Virus record (IMG/VR): IMGVR_UViG_3300024239_000011
Span: 124,001 to 188,000 of that record
Length of the DNA: 64,000 nt
Direction: 5' to 3' (one strand)
A model generated the notes under the pieces. The model was not told the origin of the DNA, did no database searches, and worked only from the letters and a program-made list of their open reading frames with translations. Shown here one piece after another: positions 1,079 to 56,576 of the stretch. Position 1 is the stretch's first letter, and each line of letters begins with the position of its first letter. The position numbers and the translations under genes are program-made.

Positions 1079-2125
1079 TTAGGAATAGAGATCGCTATTG
1101 AGGTACTGATCCAATGTATACGCCGTCACAACACTGATGGCGGCGGCGGCGGGTACTGCCACAAAGACCCCAACAAATCCGAACAGTGTAGCGCCTGCCA
1201 ACACCGCGAAGATCACCATAACCGGGTGAATCCCAATGCTTTCCCCAATCAGTTTTGGGACGAGTACACCACTTTCAACGACATGAACCACCGCAAACAC
1301 CGCACCAACAATGGCAAGATGGTACACGTCGTGGAATTGAAGGAACGCGAGGATTAATGCAACCGATACGCCCCCAATCATGGCGACATACGGAATGAAT
1401 GCGAAAATACCGGTCAGCATCCCGACAATCAGCCCGAAATCAAGACCGACTAACCACAACCCAACACCATAACCGACCGCAAGGCACGCACAAACCATAC
1501 CCTGACCACGGAAGTATGCAGATAGCTTTCCATCAATTTTGGTGGTGATGTGATCAAATGCGGGTTTCACCGACCGAGGGAGATGGAGATGAACCCATTC
1601 GATCAGTTTTGGCCAATCCTTGACCATGTAATAGGCGACGATTGGGGTTAACGCCAAAAGGGCGAAGAGATGAATTGCCCCAAGGCTTCCTGTGATCATA
1701 TGGGATGCAATCGCCCCGGCTTTCTCAAATGCCGCGCTTCCATGTGCCGCTAACGTTTCCTTGAGTTGGGCGATTTGATCATCACTCATATATTGTTTTA
1801 AGTACGGCATGAGTTCGCTCGTGCGTGTATTGAGCGCCATTTTCATGTCAGGGATGCGCTGAATAAGGTTGGTGATTTGATGCCAGATCAGCGGACCCAC
1901 ACCAAGTCCAATCATTCCAATAAGCAGGAAGAAAGAACCGACTACGCCACCGGCAGCAACAGATCGCGATACCCCGCGTCGATCCAGTTTTTCAACGAGG
2001 GGATCAACCAGATACGCAATCACAGCGCCAATCACAAACGGTGCCAGGATAGAAGAAAGGTAGTGGATCAAGACACCAGCGGTGACAATCACCGCCAGCC
2101 AAACAATAGTTTTTTTCGACATCAT
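1079..2125 (-). CDS. AI-2E family (PerM-like) transporter
   Basis: Multi-TM protein with ILAPFVIGAVIAYLVDPLV, YFRGQ, FIPYV and GIHPVMVIFAVLAG motifs. Confidence 0.9.
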   Translation of the reverse strand: MMSKKTIVWLAVIVTAGVLIHYLSSILAPFVIGAVIAYLVDPLVEKLDRRGVSRSVAAGGVVGSFFLLIGMIGLGVGPLIWHQITNLIQRIPDMKMALNTRTSELMPYLKQYMSDDQIAQLKETLAAHGSAAFEKAGAIASHMITGSLGAIHLFALLALTPIVAYYMVKDWPKLIEWVHLHLPRSVKPAFDHITTKIDGKLSAYFRGQGMVCACLAVGYGVGLWLVGLDFGLIVGMLTGIFAFIPYVAMIGGVSVALILAFLQFHDVYHLAIVGAVFAVVHVVESGVLVPKLIGESIGIHPVMVIFAVLAGATLFGFVGVFVAVPAAAAISVVTAYTLDQYLNSDLYS

Positions 2126-18395: not shown

Positions 18396-19358
18396 ATGCG
18401 CATCAAAGAAATCCTCGAAGATACATCCACATCACCATGGTACTTTGTCATTTCCAAGGATGGTATGGCCAAGGTATTCAATGAAGATGATCCCGAATAC
18501 CTGAAGCATATCTGTGATCTGGGCTGGGAAGTTGAATGGGATAGCGCCCGTAGTCCCGAGCAAGGATACCGTTTTGCCCGTGAACATGGATTGAAACCTG
18601 TTGGTCAAAAAGAAAGCCCGCTTGACAATCCGAACTTCCGTAAATGGTTCGCAGGCAGTAAGGTTGTAGACAAGAACGGTAATCCGCTTGTCGCCTACCA
18701 TGGCACGTCCCAGGATTTTGAGGCATTCAGTGTGAAACCCACCAAGAACGTTGGTCGTTATGGTTTCAACCGTATTGGGTTCTGGTTTGATACCGACCCC
18801 ACTACCCCTAATTATTTCGCGGGCGATGATGGCGATAGTATTGAAGGGCGTCAGGGTGGTGGAAACGTTATGCCGTGTTACCTGTCGATCAAACACCCAT
18901 TGGTTATTACCAGTGAGGCTTTAAGCGCACGAATGGAAGCACAGCTTCGTGATCTGTGGGCACAACATAAGGCGCTCTGGCAGAAATACAACACCGAACG
19001 TAAGGCGACCCCCACTTACGATGATAACCTTCATCGAAAATATAGTGCCCTGTCCAAGAAAATCATGGCTGAAATTGAAGATATCAAAGCTCGGCGCGGG
19101 TCGGATTCTTTCTATAAACTCATGAGCCTACTTCCCCATGGACCAAAGACCAAGGATGCCGATGTTGACCAATTTGTGGCTGACGCGAAAGCCGAGGGAT
19201 ATGACGGCATTCTGCTCAAGGATACCCTGGCAGATGACGGCTCCCGTGGTGGGAAGCTGACTGACTGGTGGTTGCCTTTCGACCCCCACCAGATCAAGTC
19301 AGTGTTCAATAAGGGCACGTGGAGTACGGAGACGCCCAAGCTCTCCGAAGGGGCTTAA
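18396..19358 (+). CDS. ADP-ribosyltransferase-like (ART-PolyVal type) late/virion protein
   Basis: FRKWFAGSKVVDKNGNPLVAYHGT, GFWF, GYDGI, FDPHQIKSVFN; late promoter at 18368. Confidence 0.7.
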   Translation: MRIKEILEDTSTSPWYFVISKDGMAKVFNEDDPEYLKHICDLGWEVEWDSARSPEQGYRFAREHGLKPVGQKESPLDNPNFRKWFAGSKVVDKNGNPLVAYHGTSQDFEAFSVKPTKNVGRYGFNRIGFWFDTDPTTPNYFAGDDGDSIEGRQGGGNVMPCYLSIKHPLVITSEALSARMEAQLRDLWAQHKALWQKYNTERKATPTYDDNLHRKYSALSKKIMAEIEDIKARRGSDSFYKLMSLLPHGPKTKDADVDQFVADAKAEGYDGILLKDTLADDGSRGGKLTDWWLPFDPHQIKSVFNKGTWSTETPKLSEGA

Positions 19359-29952: not shown

Positions 29953-30029
29953 TGGTAGGAACGGCGGGGGTCGAACCCGCAGCATCACTGGTTCTACGCC
30001 AATGTGGTCTACCGATTGCCTACGTTCCC
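29953..30029 (-). tRNA. Atypical short-arm tRNA with Leu(TAG) anticodon and G33
   Basis: Loop CGTAGAA, no variable arm, CCA. Confidence 0.75.
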
Positions 30030-30777: not shown

Positions 30778-31260
30778 ATGCTTGTTACGATCTTCGCGGA
30801 CGCATCTTTCTGTCCGAAAACTTTCGCTGCTGGTTGGGCAGCCTGGATAAAATCCGAACGCGGCACTTATCGGGGTGATGGCGCGATGAAAACCATTGTC
30901 CCGGACAACAACCTTGCTGAACTGTATGCCGTGATTAATGCAATCAAGCTGGCATTCGTTTCGGAAGTGGCAGTAGCCGGGGATACGCTGTTGGTGGAAG
31001 CAGATAATCATCGTGCCTTGGCGATCCTAGCAAACCGAGGAAAGAACCTCACTATCCTCGAAAAGAAAGCCGCTACACTACTCAACGGATTGCGCTCAAC
31101 GTATGACTTCACCATCAAACCTAGACACGTAAAGGCGCACTGCGGGACTGCGGTACCGCGCACGTGGGTCCATGATGATTGTGACAAACGCGCTAAGGCA
31201 CGAATGCAAGAAGCGCGTGAGAAATTGGTGCCCCCGACCGGATTCGAACCGGTACCTTGA
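30778..31260 (+). CDS. RNase H-like protein
   Basis: IFADAS, NNLAELYA, EADN, RHVKAH, CDKRAK. Confidence 0.85.
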   Translation: MLVTIFADASFCPKTFAAGWAAWIKSERGTYRGDGAMKTIVPDNNLAELYAVINAIKLAFVSEVAVAGDTLLVEADNHRALAILANRGKNLTILEKKAATLLNGLRSTYDFTIKPRHVKAHCGTAVPRTWVHDDCDKRAKARMQEAREKLVPPTGFEPVP

Positions 31261-31303
31261 CGGGATTTAAAGCCGTTGCCACTGCCAATTGCGCTACGGG
31301 GGC
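31226..31303 (-). tRNA. Atypical short-arm tRNA-Leu(TAA)
   Basis: Cloverleaf, loop TTTAAAT, C31-C39 mismatch, no long variable arm. Confidence 0.75.
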
Positions 31304-31836: not shown

Positions 31837-31913
31837 TGGTTCCGGGGAGAGGATTCGAACCTCAAACTTTCCTGATTCAAAGTCAGGCGGCCAGACCAAC
31901 CAGCTACCCCGGA
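31837..31913 (-). tRNA. tRNA-Gln(TTG)
   Basis: U1-A72, loop CTTTGAA, CCA. Confidence 0.9.
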
Positions 31914-31998: not shown

Positions 31999-32655
31999 TC
32001 ACCAAATCAAATCCTCGACAAAATTCATACCGGATTTCAACCCATTCTTTGGTGGATTGTATCTAACCGTGAATGTGGTTTTTCCCAGGCAACTATCTGG
32101 AAGTCTTATTACTTTGTCTATTAACGGCAAATACACCAAAATAAGATCAATTTCTGCCGCAGAATACGTCAAAACTTTTCCATTTCCATGATCAGACACA
32201 AGGTTGATTACTATACTTCCCTGTGCTTTATCAGATTTTCCGTTTGCGTATTTTACCTGAACTCGCTTTAGTTTCTCGCCATCGTCAAGCACAAAATCAT
32301 AACGAACATCGGTAGTTGGCTTACTCAATACATACCCAAGTTCAGCAGCACGTATTTGGATTTTCAACGCCGCAATTTCACCACGCAAATTAGTGGTAAG
32401 GTTTTCATGCAACGCCTTATGCTCGATCAAACCATATTGTTCGCATCGACGCTGAAAATCATCTGCATTTTTCTTATTCACCGCACGAGCATTTTCTTGC
32501 AAACGAGATTTTAGAATTTCAGCCTGCAATGGATAATCGCGAAGCCAATAACTTGCTGTGCTTTTCGACACATTCAGTTCGGCGGATATTTCTGCCAGTG
32601 ATTTATTCTGTTTACGTAATTCTATTGCTTTTTCTCGTTCCGTTATTTTTGTCAT
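31999..32655 (-). CDS. HTH plus PD-(D/E)XK homing endonuclease
   Basis: RGEIA...RYDFVLD...RVQVK. Confidence 0.85.
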   Translation of the reverse strand: MTKITEREKAIELRKQNKSLAEISAELNVSKSTASYWLRDYPLQAEILKSRLQENARAVNKKNADDFQRRCEQYGLIEHKALHENLTTNLRGEIAALKIQIRAAELGYVLSKPTTDVRYDFVLDDGEKLKRVQVKYANGKSDKAQGSIVINLVSDHGNGKVLTYSAAEIDLILVYLPLIDKVIRLPDSCLGKTTFTVRYNPPKNGLKSGMNFVEDLIW

Positions 32656-32723: not shown

Positions 32724-32817
32724 TGGCGGAAGACGGAGGTCTTGATCCCCAACCGCAGGGTCACTGCGATCACACTCCTTAGCAGGGAGGTCTAGGCACT
32801 CGCCTAGTTCATCTTCC
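32724..32817 (-). tRNA. 8/4 tRNA-Ser(GCT) with Sec-like 6-bp D stem
   Basis: 8-bp acceptor, 4-bp T stem, G73, long variable arm. Confidence 0.85.
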
Positions 32818-32822
32818 AAAAA

Positions 32823-32908
32823 TGGTTCCGGGAGTAGGAGTCGAACCTACACAGGGCGTTCGCCCCCGCATTCAAAGTGCGGTGTCCTACCAATTAGACG
32901 ATCCCGGA
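32823..32908 (-). tRNA. tRNA-Gln(TTG) with a long variable arm
   Basis: GGGCG-AA-CGCCC variable hairpin; U1-A72, A73. Confidence 0.85.
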
Positions 32909-32913
32909 TCAAT

Positions 32914-33000
32914 TGGCGGAAAGCGGGGTACTCGAAACCCAGACCACGAGGGTCCACATCGCTTAGCAGGCGAGTCCGTGCCCTGCACGGTTCACTTTCC
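32914..33000 (-). tRNA. 8/4 tRNA-Ser(GCT)
   Basis: 8-bp acceptor, 4-bp T stem, 6-bp D stem, G73. Confidence 0.85.
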
Positions 33001-33085
33001 ATGTGAATTGAGTGGTCTGCTGCGCACCGTTCTTCTGTTCGGCGTCTTTGCACATGGGCGCGACCCATGACAGCAGAAATTGTGG

Positions 33086-33710
33086 CTATTTCAGCGCCAA
33101 TCGCAGCCGATCAACACCGATAGCCCAACCAATACCTTCAGCGTAGCGTCCGCCACCAGCAACCTGTTTCTGGGCACCAAGCGAGGAAACCTCCACCTCG
33201 AACCCATCTTCGACGTAGTACGTCAGCCCACGTTTCACCGATTCCACGAAGGTGTATTCGACCGGCAACGCATCGAGGCATCGCCGCAACAACTCCGTGA
33301 CTTCTTCCGTGTCCGCTGGACCAGACCCGCCGAGCAGTTCGACCCCAAACTGAGTGAACTCGCGGTACCTTCCCGCTTGGGGGCGCTCGTAGCGATAGCA
33401 CCGGTTACAATAGAACAGGCGCATCGGCTTTTTAGGCTTGATCTTGCTCCATTGGTCCCGATATAGCTCCTGAACCAAGCCAGTCACTTCCGGGATCAAA
33501 CAGACTGGGCGATTGCCCTTATCGTTGAAAGCCCACATCTGGTTTACGATCTCGGGACCAGCCTTATCGATGAAGGTTTGCTGTTCCCAGATTTCCGGAA
33601 GAATTACTTCCTCGAAACCAGCTTCAGTGAACTACCCTCCGAACAGTATCGATGATCATGCGGTATTGACGAGCGTCATCGCCCATCAGGACTTGTGTGC
33701 CTCGCAACAT
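33086..33710 (-). CDS. Minimal histidyl-tRNA synthetase catalytic core, split by a +1 frameshift near 33630
   Basis: MLRGT...RRVV in frame 0 joins TEAGFEEVILP...YRYERPQAGRYREFTQFGVE...RGLTYY...AGGGRY...GWAIGVDRL in the +1 frame. Confidence 0.85.
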
Positions 33711-33735
33711 TGTCTTGCCTTTCGTTTGCGTAGTT

Positions 33736-33812
33736 TGGGGTGGCTGACGGGGTACGATCCCGCAACCTTCGCAGTCACAGTGCGACGCTCTACCAATTGA
33801 GCTACAGCCACC
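33736..33812 (-). tRNA. tRNA-His(GTG) with encoded G-1:C73
   Basis: Cloverleaf, loop CTGTGAC. Confidence 0.93.
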
Positions 33813-33828
33813 ACAGAAATTAAAGAAT

Positions 33829-33921
33829 TGGCGGAAGGGAAGGGACTCGAACCCCCAAACCCCCTTGCGGAGATCAAACACCTTTCCAAGGTGCGCTGTT
33901 CGCCAGTACAGTAGCCCTTCC
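33829..33921 (-). tRNA. tRNA-Ser(GGA)
   Basis: 7/5 cloverleaf, long variable arm, G73. Confidence 0.92.
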
Positions 33922-33946
33922 ATGGTAACTATTGTTACCATTTAAT

Positions 33947-34023
33947 TGGTCGGTGTGGAGGGACTTGAACCCCCATGATAACCTGTCCCCGAGACAGGTG
34001 GCTTACCATTGGCCCACACACCG
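33947..34023 (-). tRNA. tRNA-Pro(CGG)
   Basis: Cloverleaf, CCA. Confidence 0.9.
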
Positions 34024-34025
34024 GT

Positions 34026-34116
34026 TGGCGGAAATTGATGGCATCGAACCATTGACCCTACTTAGGTGTCACCATCGTTTTCAAGACGATTTAGGGAGCC
34101 AACCCTGGCAATTTCC
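34026..34116 (-). tRNA. 8/4 tRNA-Ser(TGA)
   Basis: GGAAATTG/CAATTTCC acceptor, ATGG/CCAT T stem. Confidence 0.88.
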
Positions 34117-34172
34117 ATTGAAGTTGGTGCGGCGGACAGAGATCGACCCTGCACTACCAAATTCCAACAGTA

Positions 34173-34251
34173 TGGTCGGCGCGGCGAGATTCGAACTCGC
34201 GATCTCGTGTTCCCGAAACACGCGGGGACGACCAGACTCCCCTACGCACCG
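34173..34251 (-). tRNA. tRNA-Pro(CGG)
   Basis: Cloverleaf, CCA. Confidence 0.9.
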
Positions 34252-34344
34252 TTACCTGTTGACAAGGCACCACGAGGTGCCTACACGTTGAAAATCTCGG
34301 CACCAGGGCTTCGGCGCCCTTATTTGGTGGGAAGTCCCATGAAA

Positions 34345-34411
34345 TGGTGCGGTCGAGGGGACTTGCCATGCGTGTCTGAGACGCACCTGTATACCATTCC
34401 AGCACGACCGC
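34345..34411 (-). pseudogene. tRNA-Leu(CAG) with variable arm and part of the T arm deleted
   Basis: Intact acceptor, D and anticodon arms; 67 nt; CCA. Confidence 0.7.
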
Positions 34412-34840
34412 GATTGACTTAATGAATTACTTGGTGTATAGTATTGGTTCAACGGGAGAGCAGCCCATGAACCCGAAAGAACGCGAACAAGCATTGTGCG
34501 CTTTGTACAGCAAGTACAAGGACGAACCGCTGAAGGCGCTCGAAGAGTTCTTCGAAATCAGTTCGCACGATTGGCTGCTCAACTATCGCCACGAAGGCGA
34601 ATGTCTCGATCCCCACATTTACACGTGGGTCGAATTCGAAGCGTTGAACGACCCCCGCATCTATGGCAGCTTCAAGGTGATTTCTAAATCGTCCCTGGTG
34701 GGAAGAAAGTTCGAAATCCGTTGGCATTGGGACGGCGGTCTTCCGAACATGTTGTTGCCCGTGATCCGCTTCACCGATGTCTGGTTCCTGCCACGAGAAA
34801 TGAAGTACGTGCAGCGAGAGGCAGCATAGTTTATAGATGG

Positions 34841-34927
34841 TGGTGCGGCTGACTGGACTCGAACCAGCACGGGAAATTCTTCCCCAGGCTTCTCAGACCT
34901 GTGTGTATACCATTCCACCACAGCCGC
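34841..34927 (-). tRNA. tRNA-Leu(GAG)
   Basis: Cloverleaf with long variable arm. Confidence 0.93.
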
Positions 34928-35104
34928 ATTGTTCTATTCGCGTTCGTCGCGGTAATTCCGATACGCCGCGAAGATGGTGTCCTCACCAAGGTCAGTGATT
35001 TCCGGTGAAACCTTCTCGACATCAAGTGAAGCGACCACGATCACTACCTTCCCTTCCGGGGTAAGGTACGCTTTGTCTTGAACCAACATGTTGAAATCCA
35101 AAAA

Positions 35105-35323
35105 TGGTGGAGGCGAGGGGATTCGAACCCCCGTAGACCGCATAGACCCAAGCATTACCAAGGGCTGGACTTAGGTTTAGAACTTTGGGTGCCCGCTGAC
35201 AGCTTTCGGAAGCCAGAAGGTCGGTCCAAACGAACCCCAAATCCACTTGCGCATGCGTCCCGGTTTTACCCGAGCCGTTGTTCTGTTCCACGGTGCCTAT
35301 GCCGAACTCAGGCGGACGCCCCC
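35105..35323 (-). ncRNA. Short tmRNA-like RNA (219 nt)
   Basis: GGGGGCG/CGCCTCC-ACCA acceptor with G3-U70, T arm, GCATAGGC/GTCTATGC helix, no D stem. Confidence 0.7.
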
Positions 35324-35377
35324 AAATGTTTGACCCATACAAGGATCAGGCAGTTTTGACCCTTGTGGGTCAAAAAT

Positions 35378-35462
35378 TGGTTCCGGGTGATGGACTCGAA
35401 CCACCACAAGGTTTTCACCCACGCATTCAGAGTGCGTTGACCTACCATTAGTCGAACCCGGA
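35378..35462 (-). tRNA. tRNA-Gln(CTG) with a long variable arm
   Basis: GGGT-GAAA-ACCT variable hairpin; U1-A72, A73. Confidence 0.85.
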
Positions 35463-36624: not shown

Positions 36625-36701
36625 TGGTGGGAACGGTCGGACTCGAACCGACAGCATCTTTCTTTTTGAGAGAAAGTGGTCTACCAATTGCCTACGTTCC
36701 C
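36625..36701 (-). tRNA. Atypical short-arm tRNA-Leu(CAA)
   Basis: 6-bp anticodon stem, no variable arm, CCA. Confidence 0.8.
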
Positions 36702-37571: not shown

Positions 37572-37648
37572 TGGTGGGAACGGCGGGAGTCGAACCCGCA
37601 GCATCACATATGCTGAGTATGTGTGGTCTACCAGTTGCCTACGTTCCC
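37572..37648 (-). tRNA. Atypical short-arm tRNA-Leu(CAG)
   Basis: Same body as the 36625 copy, loop CTCAGCA. Confidence 0.8.
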
Positions 37649-37655
37649 TGAAATT

Positions 37656-37739
37656 TGGTGGACAGGGAGGGAATTTGCACCCCCACAGCTTTCGCGTCGC
37701 GTTTACAGCGCGGTGAACTCACTCGTGTTCAGCCTGTCC
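37656..37739 (-). tRNA. Atypical tRNA-Tyr(GTA) with an 8-nt T loop
   Basis: Loop CTGTAAA; T loop TGCAAATT. Confidence 0.75.
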
Positions 37740-37937: not shown

Positions 37938-38014
37938 TGGTGGGGACAGCGGGACTCGAACCCGCAGCATCACTGGTTCTTAGCCAATGTGGTCTACCAA
38001 TTGCCTATATCCCC
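37938..38014 (-). tRNA. Atypical short-arm tRNA-Leu(AAG)
   Basis: Loop CTAAGAA, A34, no variable arm. Confidence 0.8.
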
Positions 38015-38712: not shown

Positions 38713-38786
38713 TGGCTGGGGAAGTAGGACTCGAACCCACATGAACGCAGTCAGAGTGCGTCATCCTGCCATTAGATGATTCCCCA
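38713..38786 (-). tRNA. tRNA-Gln(CTG)
   Basis: Canonical cloverleaf, U1-A72, G73. Confidence 0.93.
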
Positions 38787-42593: not shown

Positions 42594-43286
42594 TTAATCT
42601 ACATACCGGGCGGGGAATACCTTCGCCCACTTATCCGGGTCGTAAAATTCCCCCGCAATGGATGCCTCGAACATTTCCATCCGAACCTTCAGCATTTCTG
42701 CTGTCGGCATCGGCGGAAATAACGAGATCGGTTTGAGATCGGTCCATTTAGCCCGTCCACGCCCTTGGCGGCATGAAACCGCATATTCGTTCGTCCCATC
42801 CCGACGTTGGATGCGGTTGATCTGATAGATGGTCGTAAACGGGTTGTCTTCTGGCTCAAAAGAGAACAATTTTGACTCGACAACCTTCCGGAGGCTTTCA
42901 GGCATCAGGAGGACACTACCCGCCACATTTTCCCAATACTCACCCACCGGGGAGATCACGCACAAATGTTGCTTCTTGAACCAGTAGGACCGTGCCTTGG
43001 CTTGGGAAGCTGGATCATTCTTCTTGAACATCGCGGCGACAATGTTCTGAACGTGGTCATTTTCAAACCCGTAAGTCCGCAAACTCGGGATCGCTACTCG
43101 CACATCACGCTTTTCGATGTCTTTGAAAGGTAGATCGAAAAACATGTATTGTTGCCAGATTTCCGCATTGGAGAACTGCCGAATAGTGAACTCCATGTTT
43201 TCACCTTCCGGAAACTCCGCGAGACGAATCAGCCACTCGAAAGTGGATGGATCATAGGGGTTTGGGGAGTTGATCCATGTTTTCAT
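42594..43286 (-). CDS. Hypothetical protein coupled to aspS
   Basis: 4-nt overlap with the aspS stop. Confidence 0.65.
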   Translation of the reverse strand: MKTWINSPNPYDPSTFEWLIRLAEFPEGENMEFTIRQFSNAEIWQQYMFFDLPFKDIEKRDVRVAIPSLRTYGFENDHVQNIVAAMFKKNDPASQAKARSYWFKKQHLCVISPVGEYWENVAGSVLLMPESLRKVVESKLFSFEPEDNPFTTIYQINRIQRRDGTNEYAVSCRQGRGRAKWTDLKPISLFPPMPTAEMLKVRMEMFEASIAGEFYDPDKWAKVFPARYVD

Positions 43287-45151
43287 TTCGCGGTCACCTT
43301 GATGTGAAGTTCCTTCAACTGTTCCGGGGTGACTTCAGAGGGTGCGCCCATCATCAAGTCCTGCGCCGAGTTGTTCATCGGGAACGCCACGATCTCGCGG
43401 ATGTTCGGCTCATTCGCCAACAACATCACCATGCGGTCGATACCAGGGGCGATACCACCGTGCGGTGGTGCGCCGTAGCGGAAAGCATTGTAGAGCGCCG
43501 GGAATTTAGTCTGAACCACTGCCGGGTCATACCCAGCAATCTCAAACGCCTTCTCCATCACGTCGATGCGGTGGTTACGGATGGCGCCCGACGACAGTTC
43601 CACGCCGTTGCACACCAAGTCGTATTGATGTGCTTTGATGGTCAGCGGGTCTTGGTTCAACAACGCATCCATCCCACCCTGCGGCATCGAGAACGGGTTG
43701 TGGCTGAATTCGACCTTGCCCGTTTCCTCGTTCAATTCGAACATGGGGAAATCCACGATCCAGCAGAACTGGAAGGATTCCTCATCGTAGTTGTCCGACC
43801 GCTTGGCAGCTTCGACACGCAGCTTGCTTGCCCACTGATACGCCTCTTTCTTCGGACCAGCAATGAACATATATGATGCATCCGGTTTTTCAAATTGAGC
43901 GCATGTAGTTTCATCCATGAAATCCACGGCGATGGACCACATCTGCTCGTCGGTGAAAAACTTTTCCATCGGACCAGAAACGCCGGTCAGCACATGCGGC
44001 TCCGTGCGCGCGTGCGACAACGATTCTTTCCAATCTGTGATCTTGAAGTAGCCAAGACCGGGCATACCCAAATCCTTGGCATAGTTATCCATGTCCTTGT
44101 GCCATTTACCCGTCAGCTTTCCAGCGTCGGCATATACCGGGATGCACAACACAACACCGTTCTTATCGATGACTTCCTGAAGGAACGGTGGCGCATTCGG
44201 TGCAACAACCTCCGTAACATCACGGATATAGATGTTGTCGTCCACACGCAGATCGGGTTTGTCGTTACCAAACAATTGGATAGAAGCATCATAGGTGTAG
44301 GTTCGCCATTCCGGGTTGACGTACCAGTTGGATGTGGGTCCGCAATAACTGACTGAGGTGAATTCCTCGAACACCCGCGATACTACATCCTTGACAACGC
44401 CGAACACCTCTTCTTGGGTAGCAAATGCCATTTCCATGTCAAGCTGGTAGAACTCACCCGGCGACCGGTCAGAACGCCCAGCTTCATCGCGGAAGCACGG
44501 GGCAATCTGAAAGTACCGCTGCACCCCTGAACACATCAGAATTTGCTTGAAAATCTGCGGAGCCTGGGGCAGCGCGTAGAATTTACCGGGATGCAAACGG
44601 GCAGGCACCAAATAATCACGGGCGCCTTCCGGACTAGAAGCCGTCAGAATGGGCGTCTGAATTTCCATGAAGTCCTGGCGTACCATTTCGTTGCGCAGCA
44701 TCCAAATCACGTCGGAACGCAGTTTGAGGTTCTGCTGCATTTTCGGGCGGCGAAGATCGAGGTACCGATACCGCAGGCGAGCTTCGTCCGATGCAGTGAA
44801 ATCTTCATCGTGCAGCGTGAACGGAAGTACCGCCGCCTGATTGAAGATTTCAAACTCTTCCACGACCAGTTCATATTTGCCAACGAACCCGAGTTTTTCG
44901 TTGGTAGTGCCTTCCGGGCGCAGACGCGGCGTTCCGCGAACTTCCACACAGCTTTCTTCACGAATCTTTGCCAGGGCGGCAATGTTCGGGTTGTTGGCAT
45001 CAAGCGCACACTGCATTACGCCATCGTAGTCACGGATGTCCACGAACAACAACCCGCCGTGGTCGCGCACTCGGTGAACCCAACCGCGTAAGGCAACCTT
45101 CTGTCCAACTGAACATGAACCGGGTGAACCAATCGGATAGACGATGTACAT
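43283..45151 (-). CDS. aspS: Aspartyl-tRNA synthetase, probably non-discriminating
   Basis: RDHGG, RLRYRYLDLRR, YALPQAPQ, QIAPCFRDE, GAPPHGGIAPGIDR. Confidence 0.96.
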   Translation of the reverse strand: MYIVYPIGSPGSCSVGQKVALRGWVHRVRDHGGLLFVDIRDYDGVMQCALDANNPNIAALAKIREESCVEVRGTPRLRPEGTTNEKLGFVGKYELVVEEFEIFNQAAVLPFTLHDEDFTASDEARLRYRYLDLRRPKMQQNLKLRSDVIWMLRNEMVRQDFMEIQTPILTASSPEGARDYLVPARLHPGKFYALPQAPQIFKQILMCSGVQRYFQIAPCFRDEAGRSDRSPGEFYQLDMEMAFATQEEVFGVVKDVVSRVFEEFTSVSYCGPTSNWYVNPEWRTYTYDASIQLFGNDKPDLRVDDNIYIRDVTEVVAPNAPPFLQEVIDKNGVVLCIPVYADAGKLTGKWHKDMDNYAKDLGMPGLGYFKITDWKESLSHARTEPHVLTGVSGPMEKFFTDEQMWSIAVDFMDETTCAQFEKPDASYMFIAGPKKEAYQWASKLRVEAAKRSDNYDEESFQFCWIVDFPMFELNEETGKVEFSHNPFSMPQGGMDALLNQDPLTIKAHQYDLVCNGVELSSGAIRNHRIDVMEKAFEIAGYDPAVVQTKFPALYNAFRYGAPPHGGIAPGIDRMVMLLANEPNIREIVAFPMNNSAQDLMMGAPSEVTPEQLKELHIKVTAK

Positions 45152-50133: not shown

Positions 50134-50287
50134 TGCTATTCGCCATTATGATCCTTTAAAATTAGCCGCATCGCTGGGAGCATGCATTGAATATTCAATG
50201 CTCAAACGCGGCTTTGTTGTTGTTAATTGCCAGTAAACCGCATTTGTGCTAAATAGGTATATACAGAGTATATACCGAGGTCGATCC

Positions 50288-51874
50288 ATGCCAGTATGTT
50301 GCCAAATTTGCGGACAAGAATTTACCAAACAAATTACCAATAGCCATCTTAAGCGTCATAGCATCACCACCGCTGATTATAAGAAGCAATTTGGGGATGA
50401 TTCTCTTTCGTCCCCTGAATACCGCGAACAGAAACGGCAAGCCATATCTGGTTCAAACAACCCGATGTTTGGGCGATCTCAAACCGAGGAATCGCGCCGA
50501 GTGATGTCGGAACGACGGTCTGGGAAACCTGCCCATAATAAGGGCGCGGTGCTTACCGACGCGCAAAAAGATAAACTTCGTGTTCTTGCCCTTGAGCGAA
50601 ATGCTCAATGGGCAGAAAATGGTGATCATCCATTATTGGGGCGCAAGCATTCAGACGAAACGAAAGAACTGATACGTCAGAAACGGGCAGAACAAATTAT
50701 TAGCTCGGAGGCATGTCAACGAGCAGCAATAACTCGCAAGGAACGCGGTTATCAGGCTCCAATGCTTGGCAAGCATCATAGTGAAGAAACAAAAGCTAAA
50801 ATTCTCGTTTCTATGACGGGGTATAGACAAAAAGTAAAAGAACGCACACACCAGAAACGCTTAGACGCAATAGCCAGCTTGAATCTACGATTGATTGATC
50901 ATGATGATCATTTTATGCATTTGGAATGTCTTTGTTGCGGGCATCATTTTCATCGAACCCCACAAGTATTTGATCCATGTCGCATACGTGTAGATATGTG
51001 CGATGTTTGTCATCCTAAAATTAATTACACGAGCAAAGCAGAAACCGAAATTTGTGAATATATAAAGGGATTGCTACCAGATATCGAAGTACGTTCTCGT
51101 GACAAATATGTAATCGGTCGCGGCGAACTAGATATCTATATCCCATCGATGCGTCTTGCCATCGAGTATAACGGTCTGTATTGGCATTCCGAAATTGCTG
51201 GCAAAAGCCGCGATTACCACCTTAACAAATTAGAAAAATGTACCAAAAAAGGGATACGCCTAATTACCATTTTCGAGGATGAATATATGGAAAAACCGCA
51301 TATTGTGCGGAGTAGATTGGCGTCACTTCTTGGAAAAAGTGCCTTTGTTCTTGGTGCGAGAGAATGTGATATCGTTGAGCTATCATCGGCAGAAGCGAAT
51401 TCATTTCTTAAAGAACACCATATCCAAGGCTCGGGTCGAAGCAATGTACGTTATGGTTTAATGTATGATAACGAATTGCTATCCGTAATGACATTTAGTA
51501 AAGATAATTTGTCTCGAAAAATTAATGATTGGGAACTGAATAGATTTGCGTCTAAAACCGACTGGAATATTGCCGGTGCTGCATCTAGACTATTCAAACG
51601 ATTTATTCGCGATCATAATCCTAAACAAATCGTCACATATGCCGACAAACGATGGTCAGAGGGCAACCTATACCATCATCTTGGATTTGTGATGTCGAGA
51701 GACACCGAACCAAATTATTGGTACATTGATGGGTTACGAAGAATTCACCGTTTTGCTCTTCGTAAAAACGACCAAGATGATCCAAATATGACTGAATGGG
51801 AAAATAGAAAAGCACAGGGCTGGAATAGAATCTGGGATTGCGGAAGTATTCGTTTCGATTGGAACGCCATTTAA
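50288..51874 (+). CDS. Hef-like (Vsr-type) homing endonuclease with NUMOD3 repeats
   Basis: NPMFGR/KHSEETK repeats; ELDIYIP..LAIEYNGLYWH; IFEDE; RIWDCG. Confidence 0.85.
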   Translation: MPVCCQICGQEFTKQITNSHLKRHSITTADYKKQFGDDSLSSPEYREQKRQAISGSNNPMFGRSQTEESRRVMSERRSGKPAHNKGAVLTDAQKDKLRVLALERNAQWAENGDHPLLGRKHSDETKELIRQKRAEQIISSEACQRAAITRKERGYQAPMLGKHHSEETKAKILVSMTGYRQKVKERTHQKRLDAIASLNLRLIDHDDHFMHLECLCCGHHFHRTPQVFDPCRIRVDMCDVCHPKINYTSKAETEICEYIKGLLPDIEVRSRDKYVIGRGELDIYIPSMRLAIEYNGLYWHSEIAGKSRDYHLNKLEKCTKKGIRLITIFEDEYMEKPHIVRSRLASLLGKSAFVLGARECDIVELSSAEANSFLKEHHIQGSGRSNVRYGLMYDNELLSVMTFSKDNLSRKINDWELNRFASKTDWNIAGAASRLFKRFIRDHNPKQIVTYADKRWSEGNLYHHLGFVMSRDTEPNYWYIDGLRRIHRFALRKNDQDDPNMTEWENRKAQGWNRIWDCGSIRFDWNAI

Positions 51875-55421: not shown

Positions 55422-56576
55422 TCAGCGACTTATTTGAATGAAGGTTTTAATTCGCGGGGCTACAAGGTCGCGGAACCGTTTTCCGTTGAAAATGCCATAA
55501 TGTCCCACACCTTCAACCATGTAATGGTCACGGTACGGAACATTCGGGCACAAATCGTGTGCTGCCATAGTCTGTCCAACCCCCGTAATATCGTCCTTCT
55601 CGCCCTCAATTGTCATGAGGCAAGTCTTTGAAATCATTGATGGTTTTATCAGTTGATCATGACAGACCATCGTCCCCTGTGGTAACTGATGTTCTTGGAA
55701 TACCATCTTGATGGTTTCCAAATAGAACTTCGCATCCAAGTCCATTACAGCAAGGTATTCATCATAGAATTTCTCATGATGGGCGGCGCTCTCACCATCA
55801 CCGCTGACCAAATTATCAAAATATTCGCGATGTGCTTTTACATGCCGATCAAGGTTCATTGACATAAATCCAGCAAGTTGGAGAAAGCCAGGATATACCC
55901 TGCGTCCATGTCCTTTCTTTCCCATCGAAACTGGGTAAATTAAATTCTGTTCAAACCATGAATATGGGCGTGTTGTTGCCAGTTCATCGACTTCAGTTGG
56001 GTTAATACGTGTATCAATTGGTCCACCCATAAGGGTCATGGATTTAGGGGTTGGTTCATCGTTCGCCGCGAGAAGCGACACGGCTGCTATCACCGGTACG
56101 GAAGGCTGACATACTGCAACGAGGTGGACATTCCCGTTGAAGTATCGAATGAAGTCCATTAGGTACGTGACATAATCATCGAACCCAAAAACACCATCCT
56201 CAAGAGGAACTGCCCCCGCATCTCGCCAATCAGTGATGTAGACATTGTGATCCGGAAGGAACTCCTTCACTGTTCCCCGCAATAATGTTGCGTAATGCCC
56301 AGACATAGGAGCTACCACAAGCACATTAGGACGCCCCGCGTCCACCTCTGCAAACTGCAAAAGGTCACAGAACGGTTTAGTCAGAACATCCGTCTCCGCG
56401 ACCCCCAAATCGAATTCCGGGCGGGTATAACTGTTCGTGGAACGTTGGACCAGTTTGTTTAGGGCGTACCATTCACGGGCAAAGGGAACCGATTGTGCCA
56501 AATTGGCATTCACCGTTGCTGCAAAATTTACATGAGAACGAATAACGTTGCTTATAGAATAAAAATTATAGAGCAT
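55422..56576 (-). CDS. phaZ: Intracellular polyhydroxyalkanoate (PHB) depolymerase
   Basis: VAPMSGHYATLLR, AVCQP catalytic Cys, YPGFLQL, EGEKDDI, VGHYGIFNG. Confidence 0.93.
   Translation of the reverse strand: MLYNFYSISNVIRSHVNFAATVNANLAQSVPFAREWYALNKLVQRSTNSYTRPEFDLGVAETDVLTKPFCDLLQFAEVDAGRPNVLVVAPMSGHYATLLRGTVKEFLPDHNVYITDWRDAGAVPLEDGVFGFDDYVTYLMDFIRYFNGNVHLVAVCQPSVPVIAAVSLLAANDEPTPKSMTLMGGPIDTRINPTEVDELATTRPYSWFEQNLIYPVSMGKKGHGRRVYPGFLQLAGFMSMNLDRHVKAHREYFDNLVSGDGESAAHHEKFYDEYLAVMDLDAKFYLETIKMVFQEHQLPQGTMVCHDQLIKPSMISKTCLMTIEGEKDDITGVGQTMAAHDLCPNVPYRDHYMVEGVGHYGIFNGKRFRDLVAPRIKTFIQISR

What the first reader, a model, noticed from the sequence alone, without database searches (positions are those of the whole stretch)
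32823..35462. Gln-anticodon tRNAs with a class II variable arm and A73
Seen: Gln(TTG) at 32823 and Gln(CTG) at 35378 have paired variable hairpins, while short-arm Gln tRNAs also exist. Known: a long arm plus A73 is Leu/Tyr-like, and U1-A72 is the GatCAB determinant. This mirrors the armless Leu tRNAs and suggests deliberate shape disguise or Gln-to-Leu mistranslation.
Basis: partly seen in the sequence, partly recalled or inferred. Interest (0 to 1): 0.65.

Follow-up and report, generated by a model that had tools for sequence, protein, structure and literature searches.

The report
Phage glutamine tRNAs with extra arm
Two glutamine tRNA genes in a 543-kb phage genome carry a conserved extra hairpin that glutamine tRNAs normally lack. 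They look like working glutamine tRNAs in an unusual shape, and are one case of a wider habit of huge phages that I could not find described.

Summary
Window 32823-32908(-) is a UUG tRNA and 35378-35462(-) is a CUG tRNA. Both are good 7/5 cloverleaves with a 15-nt variable region (4-bp stem, tetraloop, UGU tail), U1-A72, A73 and an encoded CCA. They differ at 16 positions, 12 of which form six compensated base pairs, one in the extra arm.

I found 13 further long-arm Gln tRNAs in other viral and metagenomic tRNA arrays. All four extra-arm pairs covary across them.

The Leu/Tyr-like reading is weak:
- The backbone is an ordinary bacterial class-I tRNA-Gln, 71/74 identical to a Hyphomicrobium MAG tRNA-Gln that also has A73.
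- The discriminator in the family varies (A, G or U).
- The D-arm core stays class-I.
- CAA/CAG codons in the phage AspRS fall on invariant Gln positions.

Most likely these are Gln-accepting tRNAs, charged by the host GluRS/GatCAB route, that carry a selected extra arm. The same genome has long-arm Lys, Asn, Thr, Cys and Gly tRNAs and arm-less Leu tRNAs. The purpose of the arm is inferred, not shown; evasion of shape-reading tRNA nucleases is my leading guess. Charging and expression are untested. I found no paper describing class-II-shaped tRNA-Gln.

The parts
32823..32908 (-). tRNA-Gln(UUG), 86 nt, class-II-shaped: 7/5 acceptor/T stems, 4-bp D stem, 15-nt variable region, U1-A72, A73, CCA encoded
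32851..32865 (-). Variable arm of the UUG tRNA: GGGC-GAAC-GCCC hairpin plus UGU tail (tRNA positions 44-58)
   Evidence: covariation
35378..35462 (-). tRNA-Gln(CUG), 85 nt, same architecture, U1-A72, A73, CCA encoded
35406..35420 (-). Variable arm of the CUG tRNA: GGGU-GAAA-ACCU hairpin plus UGU tail
31837..31913 (-). Short-arm tRNA-Gln(UUG), 77 nt, same UCCGGGG acceptor and A73. It is the class-I-length partner of the long UUG form.
38713..38786 (-). Short-arm tRNA-Gln(CUG), 74 nt, E. coli-like UGGGGAA acceptor, G73. Its anticodon stem ACGCA/UGCGU is identical to that of the long CUG form.
29953..30029 (-). Arm-less tRNA-Leu(UAG), 77 nt, A73, Leu-type D arm. It belongs to the mirror-image set together with 31226-31303, 36625-36701, 37572-37648 and 37938-38014.
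36625..36701 (-). Arm-less tRNA-Leu(CAA), 77 nt
37572..37648 (-). Arm-less tRNA-Leu(CAG), 77 nt
37938..38014 (-). Arm-less tRNA-Leu(AAG), 77 nt

Best explanation
These are functional phage tRNA-Gln isoacceptors (UUG and CUG). They descend from, or copy, the ordinary class-I tRNA-Gln of an alphaproteobacterial (Hyphomicrobiales-like) host. The 4-5 nt variable loop of that tRNA has been replaced by a small, stable hairpin (4 bp plus a mostly GNRA tetraloop) followed by UGU.

Acceptor stem, D arm and anticodon arm keep the Gln-type sequence. The tRNAs are therefore most likely glutamylated by the host's non-discriminating GluRS or GluRS2 and amidated by GatCAB, which reads U1-A72. They would then decode CAA/CAG as Gln.

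The extra arm would point to solvent on a class-I synthetase and is tolerated by EF-Tu and the ribosome, as in Leu, Ser and Tyr tRNAs.

Its purpose is inferred only. It belongs to a systematic shape dimorphism in huge-phage tRNA sets: armed Gln, Lys, Asn, Thr, Cys and Gly, and arm-less Leu, often beside a normally shaped copy with the same anticodon. The most plausible use is to keep the phage's tRNA supply safe from enzymes that recognise tRNAs by shape or cut in the variable region. These could be host tRNA-targeting defence nucleases or a phage-induced attack on host tRNAs.

Shown: structure, conservation, Gln-type backbone, and the need for Gln at CAR codons. Inferred: the charging route and the role of the arm.
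For: - Structure and selection. Twelve of 13 other family members fold to the five-arm cloverleaf without any model.
- Gln-type backbone: the D-arm/acceptor pattern of these tRNAs hit 78 class-I tRNA-Gln genes (72-75 nt) in cellular MAGs. The Hyphomicrobium MAG tRNA-Gln(UUG) is 71/74 identical and matches the first 43 nt except for one extra D-loop U. The best class-II tRNA of the phage itself reaches only 0.72-0.74.
- Host route: that MAG has GatB and no GlnRS above cut-off, only two GluRS-like frames. The AspRS's nearest named homologues are alphaproteobacterial.
- Literature: U1-A72 is the determinant for GluRS2 and the amidotransferase (PMC9976931).
- Codon meaning: in the phage AspRS, 8 CAR codons sit in columns that are Gln in 117/117 homologues, and 3 more in columns that are 84-97% Gln.
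- No dedicated enzyme: no phage LeuRS, SerRS, GlnRS or GatB was found.
- Phage specificity: long forms occur in at least 12 other viral or metagenomic tRNA arrays but in 0 of 401 cellular genomes of the host's class. The short form occurs in 11 of 41 genomes of its order.
Against: - There is no evidence of expression or charging. Only DNA runs hold the sequence.
- A15, U48, G18G19 and A73 are all present. These are part of the E. coli Leu identity set, and A73 plus U35 are the main Tyr determinants (PMC9976931). The 3-nt 3' tail of the V arm resembles E. coli tRNA-Tyr by my own reading. Some misacylation therefore cannot be excluded.
- Whether GatCAB or ND-GluRS tolerates a long arm is unknown.
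- Covariation shows that the tRNA is under selection. It does not show that the arm itself has a role beyond folding cleanly once inserted.
- Host assignment rests on one MAG tRNA and on protein similarity.
Confidence: 0.6

Rival explanations
1. Identity switch or mistranslation. The long arm together with A73 (and U35, A15-U48) makes these tRNAs substrates of LeuRS, TyrRS or SerRS. CAA/CAG would then be partly read as Leu, Tyr or Ser, either deliberately (proteome diversification, host sabotage) or as a side effect.
For: - A73, A15, U48 and G18G19 are present.
- E. coli LeuRS ignores the anticodon, and TyrRS relies on A73 and U35 (PMC9976931).
- The V-arm geometry, with 3 unpaired nt on the 3' side, is closer to E. 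coli tRNA-Tyr than to Leu or Ser by my own reading.
- The mirror set of arm-less Leu tRNAs shows that this lineage plays with the arm.
- One CAA in AspRS (residue 292) lies in a column that is 86% Leu.
Against: - A73, A15 and G18G19 are already present in the class-I parent tRNA-Gln of bacteria, which must not be leucylated. The parent's position 48 is C in the Hyphomicrobium tRNA, so U48 is not shared with it.
- The arm is not a Leu determinant in E. coli-type systems (PMC9976931).
- The D arm is class-I, not Leu-like.
- There is no G73 or G2-C71 for Ser and no G1-C72 or G34 for Tyr.
- Family members carry G73 or U73.
- Eight invariant-Gln columns are encoded by CAR in the phage's own AspRS, so misreading would damage phage proteins.
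Confidence: 0.1
2. Not used in translation. The tRNA-shaped RNAs act as decoys or sponges for host tRNA-binding toxins or nucleases, or as processing or regulatory elements of the array transcript.
For: - Normal-shaped Gln tRNAs with both anticodons are already present in the array, so the long forms are redundant for decoding.
- Some irregular tRNAs in metagenomes were charged but not used in translation (PMC5389517).
- Phage tRNA-Tyr has been proposed as a decoy or supplement against Septu (PMC13096335).
Against: - All elements needed for translation are kept and covary: 7/5 acceptor and T stems, T-loop, G18G19, a 7-nt anticodon loop with U33 and A37, and CCA.
- The anticodon stays YUG in all 15 family members, although the search pattern required it.
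- The anticodon arm copies the host tRNA-Gln.
Confidence: 0.1
3. Neutral oddity. The variable loop is the most insertion-tolerant part of a tRNA, and fast-evolving, redundant phage tRNA copies simply drifted to a longer loop with no benefit. In the limit they are decaying pseudogenes.
For: - tRNA copies in the array are highly redundant (66 tRNAs).
- Many odd tRNAs in this genome include poorly folding ones, such as the short Gln(UUG).
- A HisRS gene fragment next door shows that decay occurs in the region.
Against: - The arm is kept in two diverged paralogues with compensatory change.
- It is kept across at least 12 unrelated contigs with different acceptor stems.
- Loops are mostly GNRA.
- The same kind of hairpin recurs in Lys and Cys tRNAs of this genome and in a cultured Brevundimonas phage.
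- Pseudogenes would not keep 98.9% pairing.
Confidence: 0.12

Closest known systems
Ordinary bacterial class-I tRNA-Gln of the UCCGGG type (for example the Hyphomicrobium MAG tRNA-Gln(UUG), L128:3807-3880)
   Same: Acceptor stem UCCGGGA, U1-A72, A73, D arm UCGUCUAAU(U)GGUAGGACA and anticodon stem CCGCA/UGCGG. Identity is 71/74.
   Different: The variable region is a 15-nt hairpin plus UGU instead of the 5-nt CGACC. The T-stem sequence differs. The gene lies in a phage tRNA array.
Bacterial class-II tRNAs (Leu, Tyr, Ser)
   Same: A long paired variable arm. A73 as in Leu and Tyr. GAAA-type V loops also occur in natural Ser tRNAs (my own knowledge of the E. coli sequence).
   Different: Class-I D arm (4-bp stem, 7-8 nt loop). 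The V stem starts directly after position 43. The anticodon is Gln. The first pair is U1-A72. Sequence identity to the phage's own Leu tRNAs is only about 70%.
allo-tRNAs and (8/4) tRNA-Ser/His of alphaproteobacterial phages (Mukai et al., PMC5389517)
   Same: Irregular, long-V-arm tRNAs with non-Ser anticodons found in metagenomes and phage tRNA clusters. This phage also carries 8/4-type Ser tRNAs right beside the long Gln.
   Different: allo-tRNAs have 8/4 or 9/3 acceptor/T stems, a tRNA-Sec-like D arm and presumed Ser identity. The Gln tRNAs here are 7/5 with a Gln backbone.
Nematode nev-tRNAs (noncanonical V-arm-containing tRNAs; Hamashima et al., cited in PMC5389517; details from my own knowledge)
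   Same: A long variable arm on tRNAs whose anticodon belongs to a class-I amino acid.
   Different: nev-tRNAs have Leu/Ser-type bodies and are leucylated in vitro (recalled, not checked here). The body here is Gln-type. nev-tRNAs are eukaryotic; these are from phages.
Phage T5 tRNA-Tyr with a divergent variable loop that resists retron-Eco7 PtuAB (as summarised in PMC13096335)
   Same: The phage tRNA differs from the host tRNA in the variable region. The variable region is what a defence nuclease cuts.
   Different: That is a class-II tRNA with an altered arm and a demonstrated effect. Here a class-I tRNA has gained an arm and no nuclease is known.

Membership tests
Bacterial tRNA-Gln (indirect-pathway type) | Anticodon YUG with U33 and A37 in a 7-nt loop | tested here: met
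   CUUUGAA and CUCUGAA loops
Bacterial tRNA-Gln (indirect-pathway type) | U1-A72 first pair (GluRS2/GatCAB determinant, PMC9976931) | tested here: met
   Present in both window tRNAs and in 12 of 14 family members
Bacterial tRNA-Gln (indirect-pathway type) | Sequence kinship of acceptor, D and anticodon arms with cellular tRNA-Gln | tested here: met
   71/74 identity to the Hyphomicrobium MAG tRNA-Gln; top 12 hits are all cellular tRNA-Gln
Bacterial tRNA-Gln (indirect-pathway type) | Short (4-5 nt) variable loop, class-I shape | tested here: not met
   15-nt variable region with a 4-bp hairpin. All 78 cellular relatives are 72-75 nt.
Bacterial tRNA-Gln (indirect-pathway type) | Glutamylated by GluRS and amidated by GatCAB (or charged by GlnRS) | not testable with these tools
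   Needs aminoacylation assays
tRNA-Leu (bacterial, E. coli-type identity) | A73 discriminator | tested here: met
   Also true of the class-I parent tRNA-Gln.
tRNA-Leu (bacterial, E. coli-type identity) | Leu-type D arm (3-bp stem, long D loop with A20a) and A15-U48 | tested here: not met
   4-bp D stem, 7-8 nt loop and only U20 A21 after G19. The phage's Leu tRNAs have a 3-bp stem and a 10-12 nt loop. A15 and U48 are present.
tRNA-Leu (bacterial, E. coli-type identity) | Body related to Leu tRNAs | tested here: not met
   Best Leu tRNA of the same genome reaches 0.72-0.74, against 0.96 to cellular tRNA-Gln
tRNA-Tyr (bacterial) | A73, U35, G34, G1-C72 and a long arm | tested here: inconclusive
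   A73, U35 and the arm are present. G34 and G1-C72 are absent. The weight of each in the host is unknown.
tRNA-Ser (bacterial) | Long arm with G73 and G2-C71 | tested here: not met
   A73, C2-G71 and a V stem of only 4 bp
allo-tRNA | 8/4 or 9/3 acceptor/T-stem composition and a Sec-like D arm | tested here: not met
   7-bp acceptor stem, 5-bp T stem and an ordinary D arm

The most novel reading that the evidence does not exclude
Huge phages keep a second, shape-swapped tRNA set: a variable-arm hairpin added to Gln, Lys, Asn, Thr, Cys, Gly and other tRNAs, and the arm removed from Leu. This acts as a structural self/non-self mark. Phage translation could then continue while tRNAs of host shape are destroyed or disabled by host defence nucleases, or by a phage-directed attack on host tRNAs. 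All the while the tRNAs keep normal amino-acid identity.
Probability: 0.22. Interest if true: 0.85.

Novelty: new variant of a known kind. Interest (0 to 1): 0.6.

Why it matters
In bacteria the long variable arm is treated as the hallmark of Leu, Ser, Tyr and Sec tRNAs only. Here it sits on a covarying, multi-contig family of Gln tRNAs that keep a Gln-type body. Sister cases exist for many other amino acids, and Leu tRNAs without the arm occur in the same arrays. This shows that the arm can be gained and lost in nature without an obvious change of identity.

This matters for three reasons:
- It tests how GluRS, GatCAB, EF-Tu and modification enzymes cope with tRNA shape.
- It offers natural scaffolds for orthogonal tRNA engineering.
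- It may point to an unrecognised layer of the phage-host conflict over tRNAs. The variable region is already known to be cut by Septu and retron-Eco7.

A cultured Brevundimonas jumbo phage with long-arm Cys, Met and Asn tRNAs makes the general question testable in the laboratory.

Tried and rejected
- An exact pattern of the anticodon stem plus V arm found nothing in viral contigs. Looser patterns were needed.
- Model R1 run on five large relatives picked through the tail sheath found only short Gln tRNAs.
- I tested whether the phage's GluRS core, which lacks the anticodon-binding domain, travels with long-arm Gln tRNAs. It was absent from two partial contigs that hold long Gln. Of 12 large viral records that hold the GluRS core, only one had a long-arm Gln. 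There is no support for a link, but most records are incomplete and R1 is biased to one backbone.
- Expression: only four DNA runs of one subsurface/soil study hold the region, and there are no RNA runs. Laying their contigs on 5,501 bases listed no differences inside either tRNA among the rows shown, but 137 rows were not shown. The joints seen there have short sides and may come from other tRNA arrays. No conclusion was drawn.
- The promoter/terminator scan was at chance level.
- Neither the long Gln(UUG) sequence nor the 9-kb array region around it (which gave only short tRNA and tmRNA-like hits) found a counterpart in the cultured-phage collection.
- A genetic-code change (CAR read as something other than Gln) is rejected by the AspRS alignment.
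- An intron in the V region is rejected on knowledge: bacterial tRNA introns are long group I introns in the anticodon loop.
- Literature searches for class-II-shaped tRNA-Gln or long-arm phage tRNAs found nothing relevant beyond the papers cited.
Full report
**What the window is.**
The window is bases 124001-188000 of a single 543,035-bp contig with 48.7% GC. IMG/VR holds it as a viral record that CheckV rates complete. The window encodes a 1059-aa tail-sheath protein, a full AspRS, homing-endonuclease-like genes and many small ORFs. ARAGORN finds 66 tRNA genes in the genome. Nearly all lie on the minus strand between 77 and 173 kb, and 27 lie in the window. The DNA occurs in four runs of one subsurface/soil metagenome study. 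This is a huge phage with a very large tRNA array.

**The observation.**
Window 32823-32908(-) is a Gln(UUG) tRNA of 86 nt. Window 35378-35462(-) is a Gln(CUG) tRNA of 85 nt. Both pass the Rfam tRNA model well, at 59.6 and 51.7 bits against a cut-off of 29. Both fold on their own into a five-arm cloverleaf as the minimum-free-energy structure. They share these features:
- a 7-bp acceptor stem that begins U1-A72;
- a 4-bp D stem with G18G19;
- a 5-bp anticodon stem with a 7-nt loop;
- a variable region of 15 nt, namely a 4-bp stem, a tetraloop (GAAC or GAAA) and three unpaired bases UGU;
- a 5-bp T stem with a TTCGA loop, A73 and an encoded CCA.

The two copies differ at 16 positions plus one D-loop base. 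Twelve of these differences form six pairs changed on both sides that preserve pairing, one of them in the variable stem (C-G to U-A). Short-arm Gln tRNAs with the same two anticodons lie at 31837-31913 and 38713-38786.

**The family elsewhere.**
A pattern taken from the acceptor and D arm found mostly short Gln tRNAs in viral contigs, but also long ones. A second pattern required 23-28 nt between the anticodon loop and the T loop. It found three viral and eleven metagenomic stretches, one of which is this genome. In total I collected 15 long-arm Gln sequences, including the two here.

Their acceptor stems are diverse (UCCGGG, UGGGGA, UGUGGA, UCAGGA, UCACUG, UGAGCG, AGGCGA). Their discriminators are A, G or U. 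On the model-fitted alignment:
- 98.9% of cells are paired, against 70.2% in shuffles;
- the covariation score is 0.734 against 0.185;
- sliding the partners by one to three columns collapses pairing to 39-56%;
- all four variable-stem pairs show changes on both sides.

Because that alignment leans towards the model, I also folded 13 members with no model. Twelve of them gave the same five-arm cloverleaf. Most variable-arm loops are GNRA. The search patterns fixed parts of the D arm, anticodon loop and T loop, so conservation there is by ascertainment. The variable arm and the acceptor stem were free.

**What the body of the tRNA is.**
The hits came from Patescibacteria, Acidobacteriota, Chloroflexota, Ilumatobacteraceae, Bdellovibrionota and others. 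All 78 tRNAs recovered from them are Gln tRNAs of 72-75 nt with A73 or G73.

The nearest is the lone tRNA-Gln(UUG) of a Hyphomicrobium MAG. It is 71/74 identical to the long UUG tRNA and matches the first 43 nt apart from one extra D-loop U. It also ends in A73. In contrast, the closest class-II tRNA of the phage itself reaches only 0.72-0.74.

ARAGORN's parse shows that the long Gln tRNAs keep a class-I core, with a 4-bp D stem and a 7-8 nt D loop. The phage's class-II Leu tRNAs have a 3-bp D stem and a 10-12 nt loop. The five arm-less Leu tRNAs keep a Leu-type D arm. In both directions the arm has changed while the identity-bearing body has not.

The long-arm pattern was not found in 401 genomes sampled from the class of that MAG. 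The short-arm pattern was found in 11 of 41 genomes of its order. So far the long form is seen only in phage-like tRNA arrays.

**Charging: what can be said.**
- The phage encodes AspRS, IleRS, MetRS, a ValRS without its editing domain, GlyRS-like and HisRS fragments, and a 325-aa GluRS catalytic core without the anticodon-binding domain. I found no LeuRS, SerRS, GlnRS or GatB.
- The Hyphomicrobium MAG has GatB and no GlnRS above cut-off, only two GluRS-like frames.
- The AspRS's nearest named homologues are alphaproteobacterial Asp/Asn ligases.
- A tmRNA-like element in the array matches Brevundimonas jumbo phages.
- 8/4-type Ser tRNAs, known from alphaproteobacterial phages (PMC5389517), flank the long Gln.

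Together these point to an alphaproteobacterial host that makes Gln-tRNA through GluRS plus GatCAB. In that route U1-A72 is the key determinant (PMC9976931). The long tRNAs keep it.

According to the same review, E. coli LeuRS needs A73, A15-U48, G18G19 and A20a, but not the long arm. Adding an arm therefore does not add Leu identity. A73, A15 and G18G19 are already present in the cellular parent; the Hyphomicrobium tRNA has C, not U, at position 48.

It is established knowledge (not tested here) that class-I synthetases such as GluRS and GlnRS approach the tRNA with the variable region facing solvent. Sterically, a small arm is therefore plausible.

In the phage's own AspRS, 8 CAA/CAG codons sit in columns that are Gln in all 117 homologues, and 3 more in columns that are 84-97% Gln. 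Only one sits in a Leu column. The phage therefore needs CAR read as Gln.

**What the arm is for.**
This part is inference. In this genome, ARAGORN finds long variable regions in Lys(UUU, CUU), Asn, Thr(CGU, UGU), Cys (two copies) and Gly(UCC). Several carry the same kind of GC-rich stem with a GAAA loop. For example, Lys(UUU) has GGGC-GAAA-GCCC and Gln(UUG) has GGGC-GAAC-GCCC. For Gln(UUG), Gln(CUG), Asn, Thr(CGU, UGU), Gly(UCC) and Leu(UAA, UAG, CAA) there is one long and one short copy.

Other contigs with long Gln also hold long Thr, Gly, Glu, Cys, Asn and His tRNAs and arm-less Leu tRNAs. Other huge viral records hold long Arg, Lys, Met, Glu, Ile and His tRNAs. The cultured Brevundimonas phage Kabachok has long Cys, Met and Asn tRNAs. 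The phenomenon is thus general and not tied to one synthetase.

Defence systems that cut the variable region of tRNA-Tyr are known, and T5 escapes one of them through a different variable loop (PMC13096335). My best guess is that shape variants protect the phage's tRNA supply from enzymes that read shape. I give this about one chance in four. A simple stabilising or neutral-but-tolerated insertion is the sober alternative.

**Known or new.**
Searches of the paper library found allo-tRNAs, 8/4 Ser and His tRNAs in alphaproteobacterial phages, and a citation of V-arm tRNAs in eukaryotes. They found nothing on class-II-shaped tRNA-Gln or on long-arm or arm-less variants in phage arrays. I rate this a new variant of a known kind.

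**Limits.**
- There are no RNA data.
- No charging data are possible with these tools.
- The host is inferred.
- Family members were found with patterns derived from the window, so the true spread is under-sampled.
- The GluRS-core link was tested and found no support.

Noticed in passing
window 32724-32817(-) and 32914-33000(-): Two tRNA-Ser(GCU)-like genes flank the long Gln(UUG) and were missed by ARAGORN and by Rfam at its gathering score. Both have an 8-bp acceptor stem, a 4-bp T stem, a 6-bp D stem and G73; the first has a long V arm of 8 bp, the second one of 5 bp. This is the (8/4) allo-tRNA-like Ser type reported from alphaproteobacterial phages. The first folds this way with z = -3.44.
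   Followed up: partly
window 35105-35323(-): A tmRNA-like element of about 219 nt lies inside the tRNA array. It scores 28.4 bits against Rfam tmRNA (E 1.9e-8), below the gathering score of 47. It is 78% identical to an unannotated stretch in the tRNA arrays of seven Brevundimonas jumbo phages (ON529850-ON529860). ARAGORN does not call it.
   Followed up: partly
window 29953-30029, 31226-31303, 36625-36701, 37572-37648, 37938-38014 (all -): Five Leu-anticodon tRNAs of 77-78 nt have no long variable arm but have A73. Four of them share a Leu-type D arm (AAUUGGUAGAC-like) and one backbone (GGGAACG/GGGGAUA) with anticodons UAG, CAA, CAG and AAG. Similar arm-less Leu tRNAs co-occur with long Gln in L228 and L231.
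   Followed up: partly
window 37656-37739(-): A further class-II tRNA-Tyr(GUA), 84 nt with A73, was missed by ARAGORN and found with the R1 model (43.6 bits).
   Followed up: partly
window 33086-33538(-): A 150-aa ORF matches only positions ~62-152 of HisRS (TIGR00442, 119 bits against a cut-off of 287). It is a fragment lying just downstream of tRNA-His(GUG) at 33736-33811 on the minus strand, probably a decayed HisRS gene.
   Followed up: partly
genome 227184-228161 (+), = L097:1498-2475, outside the window: A 325-aa GluRS catalytic core has HIGH-like and KMSK-like motifs but no anticodon-binding domain. It scores closer to bacterial GluRS than to GluQRS. Hundreds of 285-325-aa relatives exist, many on viral contigs of 200-600 kb. 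ARAGORN finds no tRNA-Glu or tRNA-Asp in this genome although AspRS and this GluRS core are encoded.
   Followed up: partly
genome ~85530-87083 (-), = L101:1078-2631, outside the window: A 517-aa ValRS-like protein matches ValRS models in two stretches; the one reported starts at residue 174 and aligns from model position 352, so the editing (CP1) domain and the C-terminal part appear to be missing.
   Followed up: no
genome 81155-81248, 83237-83319, 98917-99008, 99623-99712, 99872-99956, 99969-100056, 103623-103711, 105418-105500 (all -), outside the window: Long-variable-region tRNAs occur for Cys (two copies), Thr(CGU, UGU), Asn, Lys(UUU, CUU) and Gly(UCC). The Lys and one Cys arm carry GAAA tetraloops very like the Gln arm. 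There are also three Ala tRNAs with an aberrant D region and a tRNA with an 8-nt anticodon loop (ctta) at 96422-96505.
   Followed up: partly
L323:1501-1587, L323:320-406, L324:1392-1475, L324:1501-1574 (Brevundimonas phage vB_BpoS-Kabachok, ON529852.1): This cultured jumbo phage has long-arm tRNA-Cys (87 nt, GGC-GAAA-GCC arm), tRNA-Met (87 nt) and tRNA-Asn (84 nt). Its 74-nt tRNA-Gln folds with an 8-bp acceptor stem and a 4-bp T stem. It is a possible laboratory system for these odd shapes.
   Followed up: partly
window 43283-45151(-), residue 292: In the phage AspRS, one CAA codon lies in an alignment column that is Leu in 86% of 117 homologues. All other conserved CAR positions are Gln. This is probably a plain substitution.
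   Followed up: no
window 31999-32655(-) and 50246-51874(+): Homing-endonuclease-like genes lie inside or near the tRNA array: an HTH plus PD-(D/E)XK protein, and a protein with NUMOD3 motifs and a weak ROS/MucR-like match. This recalls SegB-type endonucleases in T-even tRNA regions, which drive segmental amplification.
   Followed up: no
window 18396-19358(+), 55422-56576(-), 1079-2125(-): Auxiliary genes include an ADP-ribosyltransferase of the polyvalent-protein type, a PHB depolymerase C-terminal domain protein and an AI-2E family transporter.
   Followed up: no
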